This document shows, piece after piece, positions 3,264 to 58,320 of a stretch of 64,000 bases of DNA; position 1 is the first letter of the stretch; each line of letters starts with the position of its first letter. The position numbers were made by a program, and so were the translations under genes. The notes below the pieces were generated by a model. It was not told where the DNA came from, searched no databases, and saw only the letters and a program-made list of their open reading frames with translations. The stretch spans positions 621,633-685,632 of the forward strand of contig NW_018408891.1 in NCBI RefSeq assembly GCF_002113885.1. Reading direction: 5' to 3'. The DNA is from Mizuhopecten yessoensis (taxonomy: Eukaryota).

Positions 3264-3316
3264 NNNNNNNNNNNNNNNNNNNNNNNNNNNNNNNNNNNNN
3301 NNNNNNNNNNNNNNNN
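3264..3316. other. Assembly gap (53 N)
   Basis: Run of N following a poly-G tract. Confidence 0.99.
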
Positions 3317-20753: not shown

Positions 20754-21086
20754 ATTTCGATGTTTACATTCCTAGAAAGAGGAACTATATCATATTTTAA
20801 CATTATTTTACTTAGTATGCTTGTTCGCGTGTATATATATCACAAGTGACACACATTCGTATTTGAGAAGGATTTGTTATTATCAGTGACAAGGATTGTT
20901 GTTGACTATTGTAACGTATTCAATAAGTACACAGGGGATACTACTTGTAATAGCATTATAGGACTACATATATAGGTCATGTCACACTGAGCCATTCTGA
21001 TATCCGAACAACAGACGTTATGTATCCATTGTTGTTAGACTCTACTGGAACCATGCAGTTTAGTTTCTTGTCCTAGGTAACAGAAG

Positions 21087-21369
21087 ATGAAGCGACAGAA
21101 CGTTCGGACTCTCTCCCTGATCGTGTGTACCTTTACTTACCTCCTGATCGGGGCGGCTGTGTTTGACGCCCTGGAGTCTGAGTACGAACTAGAGAACAAG
21201 AGGCGACTGTTGGAGGAGGAAGACGAAATTCTAACAAGGTATAACATTTCTGACTCGGATTTTAAAGCCATTCGACACAATGTGATCTGGTCCCGTCCTT
21301 ACAAGGAAGTCACTCAGTGGAAGTTCGGAGGTGCCCTGTATCTTTCATTGGTGGTCGTAGCAGCGATCG
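21087..21369 (+). CDS. TASK-subfamily two-pore-domain K+ channel (KCNK3/KCNK9/sup-9-like), coding exon 1 (M1, cap, pore helix 1; codons 1-94 plus 1 nt)
   Basis: N-terminus MKRQNVRTLSLIVCTFTYLLIGAAVFDALESE is nearly identical to vertebrate TASK-3/TASK-1. N53-I-S glycosylation sequon and QWKF motif present. Ends at phase-1 donor G|GTAAGT (21370). Confidence 0.96.
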
Positions 21370-21733
21370 GTAAGTAATTATCTTAAAGTGCCCACAAAAT
21401 TTAATTAACAAAAAAATGTAAATCAAAAGAAACTATATGTAAGTTGTGTTTATTATCAACAAAGGCTATTTTTAGTTCAGATGCATTCTATATTGATTTT
21501 ATATTTTTGAATAACCATGTTTCATCAGCAACAAAAGAAATTCAACGGATTTTTGATGCGAATATGAAAATATATTTATTTTGGTGTTTTCTAACGCTTT
21601 GAGGTATTGATTAATATCAGCATCAGCTATATTAATACATTAATTCATTACACGTGTTGTACACTTTATCATGCACTGCGTAGTATATGATTCAATATTT
21701 CCATGGCATAACATAGCAGTTCTATTATTTTAG
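21370..21733 (+). other. GT-AG intron (364 nt, phase 1) splitting the first Gly of the P1 GYG motif
   Basis: GTAAGT...TTATTTTAG. Splicing gives G|GT TAT GGC CAC (G95-Y96-G97-H98), in frame with ATG 21781. This matches the intron position known in vertebrate TASK genes. Confidence 0.93.
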
Positions 21734-22554
21734 GTTATGGCCACAGTACACCAAAAACGATCGGCGGAAAACTCTTTTGTATGTGCTATGCCCTGGCAGG
21801 AATTCCATTATGTATGATCATGTTCCAAAGCGTCGGTGAAAGACTCAACACTTTTGTGACATTTGCATTAAGGCAAGTCAAGAAATGCTTCCGGTTGAAA
21901 AACAAAGAGGTAACCCAAACGGATTTAATATTTATAACAATGAATTTATCCACCTTAATACTGACCTGTGGTGCCCTGGTGTTTTCACATGTGGAAGGCT
22001 GGACTTATGTAGACGCATTCTACTACAGTTTTATCACATTGACGACCATAGGTTTCGGGGACTTTGTCGCGCTCCAACAAGATAATATGGTACAGAGCAA
22101 ACCACATTACTTTGCTTTTAGTATCTTATTCATTCTATTTGGTTTAACTGTTATTTCGGCAGCCATGAATTTACTGGTTTTGCGGTTTCTTACGATGAAC
22201 ACAGCGGACGAACTTAGAGACGAAAGAGAGGCTGCAGTAGCGGCCCGAAATGCAGTGCATCTTGAAGGTGACGTCATAACCGGAAATAACGGAGTAGTCT
22301 CTAACCTGCAAGAACAGCCCATCGGACCGATAGTAGAGGACACTCTCTCTGTATGTTCTTGCTCGTGCTATAAGTGGAGGTCACCAACTGACAAGGTCTA
22401 CTCGACAAGTCCCATGGCTAATCATCTGCGTAGAAAATTTAAGGCAAAGAAGGGAATGGACAGTCACGAATACTCGAAGGATGCCGAAAGTAATATCTCC
22501 GAGGACACCGACTCCTTCATCAACTGGCAGAGGGATAAACGGGCATCACTTTGA
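21734..22554 (+). CDS. TASK-subfamily K2P channel, coding exon 2 (P1 GYGH, M2, M3, P2 TTIGFGD, M4, C-tail). Spliced protein 367 aa
   Basis: GYGHSTPKTIGGKLFCMCYALAGIPL, FQSVGERLN, TLTTIGFGDFVALQ, X-gate VLRFLT (243-248), C-terminal KRASL-stop (TGA 22552-22554). Confidence 0.96.
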
Positions 22555-23378
22555 ACTACAATTATACGTTGTGTACATGTAGCCTATACATCTTTCTTAA
22601 TATATTCTATTATTCAAATATATAATGGGTTCTTGTCAAAACATACTCTATGACATGTGTTTTATTTAAAAAAATCATTTCTTTTTCGTAAGACACAAGT
22701 TAATAATTTTACCTATAAATCGTCAAACAAGAGTGAAATATTTGATACTCAACGGAAAATCATTAAACTAGTTTTGGTTGTCCTTACTTATAACAAATGT
22801 ACATCACCTGTTACAAAGATGTCAAAGTTCATATATGTTCTTATTGTAATGCAGCACGCTGTACCTGGTGACACAATGAACAGTTAATGACGGGATTTTT
22901 TTTTGTGTCTAAACAAATTATATAATAGACTCTGCTTTAATTCATTGTCATACAATGAAATACTATTTTTATCATTAGAGTACAAAAAGTACCTTAGCAA
23001 TGGCCACTAATGAGGCACCACGTTCTGTGTGTAATTTGGGAACTGAAAACATAGTCCCTATACAGCTCCATCAAAAAGAGATGAAACGATGTAGTTAAAG
23101 ATATAACTTTTGTCATGTCGCTGGTAAAAATGTTATATTTATTATCCTACCTCTCAGAAGTGAACTGGAACAATATAAAATATATTTATGCACATAAGTC
23201 AGGTTTGAATGTGAACAATTAAAAACAAAAACAGTGTTTGTACACAATGTAAAAACGTTATTTCAGATCAGAATTTGTACATTAAACAACAATCATGTAA
23301 AAAATATGTCAGATATGAATTTGTGCTGTTAAAAGCAACTATGTACAAAAGCTATGGTAGATGTTAATTAGTAGGTTG

Positions 23379-46044: not shown

Positions 46045-46088
46045 GCATCACCGATGAGTCCCAGAAGGACGAAACGCCTGTTTGATGT
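46045..46088 (+). ncRNA. Minimal type I hammerhead ribozyme (core CCGAUGA)
   Basis: GCATCA-CCGATGA-GTCC-CAGAA-GGAC-GAAA-C-GCCT-GTT-TGATGT: stem I, perfect 4-bp stem II, GAAA, short stem III, GUU triplet (predicted cleavage after 46082). Confidence 0.82.
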
Positions 46089-56100: not shown

Positions 56101-58320
56101 ATGTCCTTGTGTGTTGACACTGTGGTATATTCTGTCCTTGTGTGTTGACACTGTGGTATAATCTGTCCTTGTGTGTTGACACTGTGGTATATCATGTCAT
56201 TGTATGTTGACACTGTGGTATAATCCGTCCTTGTGTGTTGACACTGTGCTATATCATGTCATTGTGTGTTAGCACTGTGGTATATCAAGTCATTGTGTGT
56301 TGACACTGTGGTTAATCTGTCCTGTAGTGTTGACATTGTGGTATATCATGTCCTTGTGTGTAAACACTGTGGTGTATCATGTCCTTGTGTGTTAACACTG
56401 TGGTATAATCTGTCCTAGTGTGTTGACACTGTGGTATATCATGTCCTTGTACGTTGGCACTGTGGTATATCATGTCCTTGTGCGTTGACACTGTGGTATA
56501 ACATGTCCTTGTGTTTTGACACTGTGGTATTTTCTGTCCTTGTGTGTTGACGATGTGGTATAACTTGTCCTTGTGTGTTGACACTGTGGTATATTTTGTC
56601 CTTGTGTGATGACACTGTGATATATTTATCCTTGTGTGTTGACACTGTGGTATATTCTTTCCTTATGTGTTGACACTGTGGTATATTATGTCCTTGTGTG
56701 TTGACACTGTGCATATCATATCCTTGTGTATTGACACTGTGGTATATCATGTCCTTGTGTGTTCACACTGTGGTATATCATGTCCTTGTGTGTTGACACT
56801 GTAGTATATCATGTCCTTGTGTGTTGACACTGTGGTATTTCATGTCCTTGTACGTTGACACTGTGGTATATCATGTCCTTGTGCGTTGACACTGTGGTAT
56901 ATAAAATCCTTGTGTGTTGACACTGTGGTATATAGTGTCCTTGTGTGTTGACACTGTGGTATATTTTGTCCTTGTGTGTTGACGCTGTTGTTTATTTTGT
57001 CCTTGTGTGTTGACACTTTGATATATCATGTCCTTGTGTGTTAACACTGTTGTATATTATGACTTTGTTTGTTGACACTGTGGTATTTTCTGTCCTTGTA
57101 CGTTGACACTGTGGTATATTCTTTCCTTATGTGTTGACTCTGTGGTATATTTTTCCTTGTGTGTTGCCACTGTGGTATATCATGTCATCGTGTGTTGACA
57201 CTGTGGTATAGCATGTCCTTGTGTGTTGACAATGTGTTATATCATGCCCTTGTGTGTTGACACTGTCATTGTGTGTTGACACTGTGGTATATTATGTCTT
57301 TGTTTGTTGACACTGTGGTATTTTCTGTCCTTGTACGTTGACACTGTGGTAAATTATGTCCTTGTGTGTTGACACTGTGGTATATCATGTCATTGTGTGT
57401 TGGCACTGTGGTATAATCTGTCCTTGTGTGTTGACACTGTGGTAAATTATGTCCTTGTGTGTTGACACTGTGGTATGTTCTGTCCTTGTGTGTTGACACT
57501 GTGGTATAATTTGTCCTTGTGTGCTGACACTGTGGTATATTCTGTCCTTGTGTGTTGACACTTTGATATATCATGTCCTTGTGTGCTGACACTGTGGTAT
57601 ATTCTGCCCTTGTGCGTTGACACTGTGGTATATTCTGTCCTTGTGTGTTGACACTGTGGTATGTTCTGTCCTTGTGTGTTGACACTGTGGTATAGTATGG
57701 CCTTGTGTGTTGACACTGTGGTATATTCTGTCCTTGTGAGTTGACACTGTGGTATATCATGTCCTTGTGAGTTGACACTTTGGTATATTCTGTCCTTGTG
57801 TGTTGACCCTGTGGTATATTCTGTCCTTGTGTGTTGACACTGTGGAATAGTATTGCCTTGTGTGTTGACACTGTGGTATATTCTGTCCTTGTGCGTTGAC
57901 ACTGTGGTATATTCTGTCCTTGTGTGTTGACACTGTGGTATATCATGTCCTTGTACGTTGACACTGTGGTATATCATGTCCTGCTACGTTGACACTGTGG
58001 TATATCATGTCCTTGTGTGTTGACACTGTGGTATATCATGTCCTTGTGTGTTGACACTGTGGTATATNNNNNNNNNNNNNNNNNNNTGTCCTTGTGTGTT
58101 GACACTGTGGTATATTCTGTCCTTGTGTGTTGACACTGTGGTATAGTATTGCCTTGTGTGTTGACACTGTGGTATATTCTGTCCTTGTGAGTTGACACTG
58201 TGGTATATCATGTCCTTGTGAGTTGACACTTTGGTATATTCTGTCCTTGTGTGTTGACACTGTGGTATATTCTGTCCTTGTGTTTTGACACTCTGGTATA
58301 GTATGGCCTTGTGTGTTGAA
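53200..58320. repeat. 31-bp satellite array, ~5.1 kb (~165 copies), spanning an N gap
   Basis: Unit TGTGTGTTGACACTGTGGTATATCATGTCCT with variants. A 31-aa (93-nt) periodicity appears in the spurious ORFs. Confidence 0.98.
58068..58086. other. Assembly gap (19 N) inside the satellite
   Basis: Run of N. Confidence 0.99.

What the first reader, a model, noticed from the sequence alone, without database searches (positions are those of the whole stretch)
21351..21745. TASK-like channel with an altered first selectivity filter (AAIGYG instead of TTIGYG)
Seen: the spliced pore loop 1 reads GALYLSLVVVAAIGYGH, with codons GCA (A92) and GCG (A93) at 21360-21365. Numbering is collinear with human TASK-1/3 (GSFYFAITVITTIGYGH), so T89, T92 and T93 are replaced by V, A and A, while P2 keeps TTIGFGD. 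Established: the Thr of TxGYG supplies the hydroxyl of the S4 K+ site and underlies K2P filter gating. Filters lacking it (HCN CIGYG) or with atypical SF1 (TWIK-1, C. elegans UNC-58) show reduced K+ selectivity. Inference: this may be a Na+-permeable/depolarising leak channel, or a silent or modulatory heterodimer subunit. Several coordinated changes in an otherwise intact ORF argue against sequencing error, and A-to-I editing cannot restore Thr from GCN codons.
Basis: partly seen in the sequence, partly recalled or inferred. Interest (0 to 1): 0.8.

Follow-up and report, generated by a model that had tools for sequence, protein, structure and literature searches.

The report
Scallop TASK channel lacking pore threonines
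A scallop potassium-leak-channel gene really does carry Ala-Ala where nearly all relatives have the two pore threonines; bivalves have kept this change under strong selection, and insects evolved the same change separately in Task7, a subunit reported to be silent on its own, so it is probably a partner or modified-gating subunit, though nobody has measured its ion flow.

Summary
A two-exon gene on the + strand (21087-21369 and 21734-22554) encodes a TASK-type K2P subunit, collinear with human TASK-1/3. Pore loop 1 reads V89..A92-A93-I-G-Y-G-H and pore loop 2 keeps TTIGFGD. A spliced RNA contig carries the same GCA GCG codons.

It is neither an error nor a decaying copy:
- The Ylistrum orthologue has the same AAIGYG with synonymous differences around it (dN/dS 0.016-0.025).
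- A tandem copy reads AVIG, and a canonical TTIG paralogue lies on the same contig.
- About 20 bivalve sequences (scallops, mussels, oysters, pearl oysters, ark shells, unionids, heterodonts) form one clade in which residue 93 is never Thr.

Insect Task7 shows the same changes (V/L89, A92, M/V93), but tree and AU test reject common origin, so this is convergence. Drosophila Task7 (A92, M93) is reported silent as a homomer and conducts once Thr-Thr is restored. Engineered S4-threonine mutants of TASK-1/3 conduct but lose voltage gating.

The likeliest role is therefore a partner or gating-modified subunit. The Na+-leak idea is weaker, because UNC-58 and TWIK-1 differ at another filter position. 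No electrophysiology exists.

The parts
21087..21369 (+). Exon 1 (M1 to first base of the G95 codon): M1 helix, cap region with an N53-I-S sequon, pore helix 1 and the start of filter 1
   Evidence: phmmer against PDB chains matches KCNK9/KCNK3 residues 1-93, E 5e-29. RNA contigs cover 21000-21368.
21351..21353 (+). Codon V89 (GTC). Canonical TASK has Thr here, in pore helix 1.
   Evidence: In the column analysis 15 of 20 bivalve clade members have V, while all 37 canonical sequences compared have T.
21360..21365 (+). Codons A92 (GCA) and A93 (GCG). A93 replaces the S4-site threonine of TxGYG.
   Evidence: The spliced RNA contig has no mismatch here.
21370..21733 (+). Phase-1 intron (364 nt, GT..AG) inside the G95 codon
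   Evidence: The joint 21368/9 to 21733/4 is seen in an RNA contig. All five scallop genes examined have the intron at the same position.
21734..22554 (+). Exon 2 (rest of G95 to the stop): Y96-G97-H98, M2, M3, pore loop 2, M4, C-terminal tail
   Evidence: Pfam PF07885 Ion_trans_2, 1.5e-21. KCNK9/KCNK3 residues 96-258/268, E 4e-55. Five stranded raw RNA reads lie on it.
21742..21744 (+). H98 codon (CAC), the GYGH histidine that serves as the extracellular pH sensor in TASK-1/3
   Evidence: The role of H98 is from PMC6790391.
22042..22062 (+). Canonical second filter, TTIGFGD
22177..22194 (+). VLRFLT at residues 243-248, aligned with VLRFLT of human TASK-3 and VLRFMT of TASK-1. Calling this the X-gate segment is from my own knowledge.
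   Evidence: Alignment
22537..22551 (+). C-terminal K-R-A-S-L, resembling the C-terminal 14-3-3 binding motif of TASK-1/3. That function is inferred.
   Evidence: KRAS[LVI] is conserved in scallop paralogues and many protostome homologues.

Best explanation
Shown: this is an intact, transcribed TASK-type (KCNK3/9, sup-9, Task6/7 group) two-pore potassium channel subunit of a scallop. It belongs to an old bivalve paralogue clade in which the first filter has lost the S4-site threonine. Residue 93 is A, V, L or M and never T. Residue 92 is A, S or T. Residue 89 is mostly V. The second filter, the GYGH histidine, the VLRFLT segment and both termini stay canonical. Both scallop copies (AAIG in the window, AVIG 43 kb downstream) are under strong purifying selection, and a canonical TTIG paralogue lies on the same contig.

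Inferred: in a dimer, two of the four hydroxyls that form the innermost K+ site are missing. I expect a homodimer to conduct poorly or not at all, as reported for Drosophila Task7. I expect the subunit to act mainly by pairing with the canonical TASK paralogue, giving K+-selective heterodimers with lower S4 occupancy and hence altered conductance and weakened voltage (ion-flux) gating. The same three positions changed independently in insects and bivalves, each time alongside a retained canonical copy, which argues for a specialised partner role rather than drift.

The confidence of 0.45 applies to the inferred partner-subunit mechanism. The 'shown' part I hold at about 0.95.
For: - Gene structure and collinearity.
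- Spliced RNA contig with the Ala codons, plus stranded reads on exon 2.
- Paralogues in the same genome: AVIG tandem copy and canonical TTIG copy.
- The upstream sequence of the tandem copy also occurs in the RNA contigs.
- dN/dS against orthologues: 0.016 and 0.025 for the window gene, 0.046 and 0.045 for the tandem copy.
- Synonymous differences occur at and around codons 89-94 while the residues are kept.
- The bivalve non-TT clade has support 100/99 on trees built only from the exon-2 part, so the trait columns are excluded.
- Only nine columns separate the clade from canonical sequences. Four of them (3, 89, 92, 93) changed the same way in insect Task7.
- Common origin with insect Task7 is rejected (AU p about 1e-16).
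- dTASK7 (A92, M93) is silent as a homomer and conducts after the change to Thr-Thr (PMC6790391).
- S4-threonine mutants in P1 or P2 of TASK-1, TASK-3, TREK-1 and TRAAK are functional but lose voltage gating (PMC4771873).
- KcsA T75A has water instead of K+ at S4 and very low conductance (PMC11251424).
Against: - No current has been measured for any member of the bivalve clade.
- The Task7 precedent is convergent, not orthologous, and carries Met rather than Ala at 93.
- I read the Doring 2006 results only through a review's summary and the paper's title.
- Engineered T93C TASK-1 still conducts as a homomer, so silence of the scallop homodimer is not a given.
- Co-expression with the canonical paralogue in the same cells was not tested.
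- Expression looks low: five reads in about a fifth of one raw RNA run, and none in another.
Confidence: 0.45

Rival explanations
1. It works as a homodimeric, K+-selective background channel. Its filter is permanently in 'leak mode': a linear current-voltage relation, no ion-flux (voltage) gating, and probably a smaller unitary conductance. No partner is needed.
For: [quoted passage not shown] TASK-1 T93C was recorded as a functional mutant (PMC6391080). Purifying selection is strong on the whole protein, including the trafficking-like termini.
Against: dTASK7, with Ala-Met at the same two positions, gave no homomeric current. KcsA T75A conducts very poorly. Here T89 and T92 are changed as well, which was not part of the engineered mutants.
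Confidence: 0.25
2. It is a Na+-permeable, depolarising leak channel. Loss of the S4 hydroxyls in filter 1 would relax K+ selectivity.
For: Molecular dynamics of KcsA T75A suggests compromised K+/Na+ selectivity (PMC11251424). A natural K2P, UNC-58, is Na+-permeable because of a filter-1 variant (PMC11513965). K2P filters are known to shift selectivity (PMC12658365).
Against: UNC-58 and TWIK-1 differ at the x position of TxGYG, which is unchanged here (I94). Only two of the four strands lack the hydroxyl. The KcsA paper states that selectivity measurements for T75X are lacking and that data from other channels are inconclusive. The Task7 precedent was silent, not Na+-conducting.
Confidence: 0.15
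3. It is an assembly or sequencing artefact, or a recently inactivated duplicate drifting towards a pseudogene.
For: Nothing beyond the rarity of the motif and the low read counts in one RNA run.
Against: A spliced RNA contig carries identical codons. The orthologue has the same residues with synonymous differences. dN/dS is 0.02-0.05. The clade is conserved across bivalve orders. All five scallop genes examined have intact reading frames and splice sites.
Confidence: 0.02

Closest known systems
Drosophila Task7 (dTASK7, CG9361) and its insect orthologues
   Same: A TASK-type subunit with A92 and a hydrophobic residue at 93 in pore loop 1, and V/L at 89 in the hymenopteran sequences seen here. 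GYGH and the second filter are canonical. It coexists with a canonical paralogue, Task6.
   Different: It is not orthologous. Insect Task7 groups with mandibulate arthropod sequences, the bivalve clade sits inside Mollusca, and the AU test rejects a joint clade. Residue 93 is Met or Val in the insects, and Ala in the window gene. Function has been measured only in the fly.
Human TASK-1 / TASK-3 (KCNK3 / KCNK9)
   Same: Collinear over residues 1-258 without gaps. It shares the N-terminal MKRQNVRTLSLIVCTFTYLL, the N53 sequon, GYGH, TTIGFGD, the VLRF[LM]T segment and a basic-Ser C-terminus.
   Different: T89, T92 and T93 are V, A and A. H72 is Tyr and K210 is Gln (read from the alignments).
Engineered S4-threonine mutants of K2P channels (TASK-1 T93C, TASK-3, TREK-1 T157C, TRAAK T103C)
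   Same: The same filter position loses its hydroxyl in pore loop 1 only.
   Different: Those carry a single Cys substitution made in the laboratory. Here the residue is a natural Ala, together with changes at 89 and 92, kept over long evolutionary time.
C. elegans UNC-58 and human TWIK-1 (atypical filter 1, altered selectivity)
   Same: Natural K2P subunits with a non-canonical first filter.
   Different: Their variant residue is the x of TxGYG (Cys or Thr in place of Ile/Val), not the threonine. They also belong to other K2P subfamilies.

Membership tests
TASK subfamily of K2P channels (KCNK3/9/15, SUP-9, Task6/7) | Two pore domains and four transmembrane helices in one subunit | tested here: met
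   PF07885 matches on exon 2. Exon 1 aligns with M1 to P1 of KCNK9/KCNK3. Exon 2 aligns with residues 96-268.
TASK subfamily of K2P channels (KCNK3/9/15, SUP-9, Task6/7) | Closer to TASK than to any other K2P subfamily | tested here: met
   Exon 1 gives E 5e-29 for KCNK9/3 against 1e-4 for KCNK13. Exon 2 gives 4e-55 against 3e-25 for KCNK10. Database neighbours are all named sup-9-like.
TASK subfamily of K2P channels (KCNK3/9/15, SUP-9, Task6/7) | GYGH with His98 after filter 1, and the VLRF[LM]T segment at 243-248 | tested here: met
TASK subfamily of K2P channels (KCNK3/9/15, SUP-9, Task6/7) | Canonical T-x-G-Y/F-G in both pore loops | tested here: not met
   P2 is TTIGFGD, but P1 is AAIGYG. 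This is the finding itself. By homology it remains a family member with a variant filter.
TASK subfamily of K2P channels (KCNK3/9/15, SUP-9, Task6/7) | K+-selective, acid-sensitive background current | not testable with these tools
   Needs electrophysiology
Task7-type subunits (insect Task7) | Ala92 and a hydrophobic residue at 93 in pore loop 1 | tested here: met
   Window gene AAIGYG. Nomia and Prorops AMIGYG, Neodiprion AVIGYG. Drosophila A92 M93.
Task7-type subunits (insect Task7) | Common descent with insect Task7 | tested here: not met
   Tree. AU test: log-likelihood difference 46.6, p about 1e-16.
Task7-type subunits (insect Task7) | Silent as a homomer, functional in heteromers with the canonical paralogue | not testable with these tools
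   Known only for the fly
Na+-permeable K2P of the UNC-58 kind | Cys (or another odd residue) at the x position of TxGYG in filter 1 | tested here: not met
   The window gene keeps Ile94. UNC-58 is TCGYG.

The most novel reading that the evidence does not exclude
Bivalves keep a TASK-derived channel whose half-dehydroxylated S4 site makes it constitutively permeable to Na+. It would be a depolarising 'leak' conductance built from a potassium-channel scaffold. It would have arisen independently of nematode UNC-58, by changes at different filter positions (89, 92 and 93 rather than the x of TxGYG).
Probability: 0.13. Interest if true: 0.75.

Novelty: new variant of a known kind. Interest (0 to 1): 0.52.

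Why it matters
The S4 threonine is the only side chain that touches K+ in the filter, and in K2P channels it underlies voltage (ion-flux) gating. Here nature removed it from one pore loop and kept the result under strong purifying selection across bivalve orders. Insects arrived independently at the same three substitutions. This offers a natural, replicated experiment on what a two-of-four S4 site does. It also suggests that 'canonical TASK plus threonine-less TASK partner' is a recurrent design rather than a fly oddity. For bivalve physiology it points to an unstudied component of resting conductance. I found no paper in the searchable library describing it.

Tried and rejected
- Sequencing or assembly error: rejected by the spliced RNA contig and by orthologues.
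- An alternative exon 1 with TTIG: the whole genome has only five exon-1-like matches and only one lies in the window. The nearest TTIG exon belongs to a separate gene on the opposite strand with its own exon 2.
- Pseudogene or drift: rejected by dN/dS.
- Deep orthology with insect Task7: rejected.
- Pfam on exon 1 alone gave nothing, because it holds only half a pore domain. The PDB sequence search resolved it.
- Paper searches for 'dTASK-7' found nothing. I reached the Doring 2006 result through papers that cite it.
- Two searches for prior descriptions in molluscs found nothing relevant. One of them was badly posed.
- An Rfam scan of the window found nothing.
- Run X23 gave no reads and X20 only five, so expression level is poorly known.
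- The spliced protein was never joined or searched as one sequence. All searches were exon by exon by reference, and full-length comparisons used database orthologues (P0001 and others).
- No structure was predicted, because gap-free alignment to solved TASK structures already fixes the positions.
The N runs at 3264-3316 and 58068-58086 were left alone.

Full report
**1. What is in the sequence**

The region holds a two-exon gene on the + strand.
- Exon 1 runs from the ATG at 21087 to 21369 and ends with the first base of a Gly codon, followed by GTAAGT.
- The intron is 21370-21733 and ends in TTTTAG.
- Exon 2 starts at 21734, completes Gly95, continues Y-G-H, and runs to a stop at 22552-22554.
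- Codon 89 is GTC (21351-53), codon 92 GCA (21360-62) and codon 93 GCG (21363-65). Pore loop 1 therefore reads V89-V-V-A92-A93-I-G-Y-G-H98.
- Pore loop 2 is TTIGFGD (22042-22062).

**2. Family and numbering**

- Exon 1 translated alone matches human KCNK9 and KCNK3 chains over residues 1-93 without a gap (E 5e-29). The next K2P subfamily scores about 1e-4.
- Exon 2 matches their residues 96-258/268 without a gap (E 4e-55, against 3e-25 for TREK-2). It carries Pfam Ion_trans_2.
- The numbering is therefore that of human TASK: T89, T92 and T93 are replaced by V, A and A.
- Retained features are the N-terminal MKRQNVRTL, the N53-I-S sequon, His98, VLRFLT at 243-248 and a C-terminal KRASL.

**3. 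Is it real and expressed?**

- In one public run a 1198-nt contig covers 21137-21368 and continues at 21733-22698. It skips exactly the 364-nt GT..AG intron and has no mismatch in exon 1. That is a spliced transcript carrying GCA GCG.
- The same contigs show a synonymous A>G at 21870 (Leu codon), so they come from another allele or individual than the assembly.
- A stranded raw-read run placed five reads on exon 2, all in the orientation expected for a + strand RNA. Another run had none. Expression therefore looks low or tissue-restricted.
- Contigs in two runs also carry the 5' flank of the tandem paralogue.

**4. Paralogues in the same genome**

The genome is 987.6 Mb in 82,659 contigs, and the best hits are pectinid scallops.
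- Exon-1 and exon-2 searches of the whole assembly find a tandem copy whose exon 1 starts about 43 kb downstream of the window gene's, just past the window end. It reads VVVAVIG.
- They also find a canonical copy upstream on the opposite strand that reads TVVTTIG. Two short contigs look like haplotype duplicates of these genes.
- All copies have intact frames, the same phase-1 intron in the Gly95 codon, GYGH, TTIGFGD and a KRAS[LV] end.
- No other exon-1-like sequence lies in the window, so an alternative TTIG first exon is not supported.

**5. Relatives elsewhere**

I searched with exon 2 only, by reference. This returned full-length annotated proteins from many molluscs, and their pore loop 1 could be read directly.

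| Taxon | Pore loop 1 |
|---|---|
| Ylistrum | AAIGYG |
| Pecten maximus | AVIGYG |
| Tegillarca | AVIGYG |
| Mytilus | ALIGYG |
| A mussel-like transcript | AMIGYG |
| Oysters | SVIGYG |
| Pinctada | SLIGYG |
| Sinanodonta, Mya | TAIGYG |
| Ruditapes | TVIGYG |
| Dreissena | AAIGYG |
| Second paralogue in several of these species (shown for Ylistrum, Tegillarca, oysters, Dreissena and Mya); all gastropod, annelid, priapulid and chelicerate sequences | TTIGYG |

**6. Phylogeny**

I built trees only from the part after GYG, so the trait columns were excluded.
- All bivalve non-TT sequences form one clade with support 100/99, nested inside the molluscan group (99-100 / 97-98).
- Inside the clade the window gene pairs with Ylistrum AAIGYG, and the tandem copy pairs with Pecten AVIGYG. 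The tandem duplication therefore predates the split of these scallop genera.
- Because unionids and heterodonts are included, the clade goes back at least to the common ancestor of these bivalve orders.

**7. Selection**

- Window gene against the Ylistrum orthologue: dN/dS 0.016 (exon 1) and 0.025 (exon 2), at dS about 1.8-2.0.
- Tandem copy against Pecten maximus: 0.046 and 0.045.
- At the site itself, codons 86-94 differ synonymously between species (for example GCG against GCT at 93, GTC against GTT at 90) while the residues are identical.
- By tree path lengths the non-TT genes change about 2.6 times faster than the canonical paralogue between the window genome and Ylistrum (0.12 against 0.046). 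They are nonetheless clearly constrained.

**8. A convergent precedent**

- A second search brought in arthropods. Ninety of the insect and other new sequences are TTIGYG.
- Three hymenopteran proteins read AMIGYG or AVIGYG, with V/L at 89. One is annotated 'TWIK-related acid-sensitive K+ channel 7'.
- According to PMC6790391, which summarises Doring et al. [quoted passage not shown] - On the tree the insect Task7 group sits with mandibulate arthropods (99/96) and the bivalve clade sits in Mollusca. Starred branches force three separate origins of non-TT filters, the third being a nemertean TVIGYG pair.
- Holding insects and bivalves together costs 46.6 log-likelihood units (AU p about 1e-16). 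The caveat is that I named the group after seeing the first tree.
- Only nine columns in the first 262 residues separate the bivalve clade from canonical sequences. Four of them (3, 89, 92, 93) changed the same way in insect Task7.

**9. How it probably works (inferred)**

- The Thr93 hydroxyls of the two P1 strands form half of the S4 site.
[quoted passage not shown] Simulations of TRAAK T103C show loss of ion occupancy at S1 and S4 (PMC4771873).
- KcsA T75A has water at S4 and very low conductance. Its selectivity is unmeasured, and simulations suggest it is reduced (PMC11251424).
- The fly subunit with Ala-Met at these positions is silent alone.

Putting these together, my estimates are:

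| Reading | Estimate |
|---|---|
| The scallop subunit conducts poorly alone and acts mainly in heterodimers with the canonical paralogue, tuning conductance and flux gating | about 0.45 |
| A homomeric linear K+ leak | about 0.25 |
| A Na+-permeable channel | about 0.15 |

The Na+ idea is weakened because UNC-58 (TCGYG) and TWIK-1 (TTGYG) are altered at the x position, which is Ile here.

**10. Novelty and limits**

- The genes are annotated in related species only as 'sup-9-like'.
- I found no paper in the searchable library on a molluscan K2P with an altered filter. That library misses most subscription journals.
- The kind of subunit is known from the fly. The bivalve clade is an independent, older and more diverse version of it.
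- Nothing here measures ion flow.
- The spliced protein was never assembled or searched as one piece. Full-length statements rest on database orthologues.

Noticed in passing
just beyond the window end: G000:C5564:686134-686415 (exon 1, locus L002) and 691138-691947 (exon 2, locus L007): A tandem paralogue with AVIGYG in pore loop 1, orthologous to the Pecten maximus gene. It is intact, under purifying selection (dN/dS about 0.045), and its 5' flank occurs in RNA-run contigs.
   Followed up: yes
G000:C5564:545412-545690 (exon 1, minus strand, L004) and 490365-491156 (exon 2, L008): The canonical TTIGYG TASK paralogue on the same contig. Its intron appears to be about 54 kb, compared with 364 nt in the window gene. 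Contigs C80521 and C41390 look like haplotype duplicates of exon 1 of the canonical and tandem genes.
   Followed up: partly
proteins P0096 and P0112 (nemertean Tubulanus and an unnamed transcript): A third, independent TASK lineage with TVIGYG in pore loop 1, sister to a canonical Tubulanus paralogue.
   Followed up: partly
window 1-64000, including 34830-35325 and 46045-46088: Other first-stage notes on this window describe a hammerhead-ribozyme repeat family. An Rfam scan of the whole window at gathering thresholds returned no family at all. I ran no lower-threshold scan.
   Followed up: partly
window 21870 and 22589: RNA-run contigs differ from the assembly by a synonymous A>G (Leu codon) in exon 2 and a C>T in the 3' untranslated region. 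These are probably polymorphisms.
   Followed up: no
   Followed up: no
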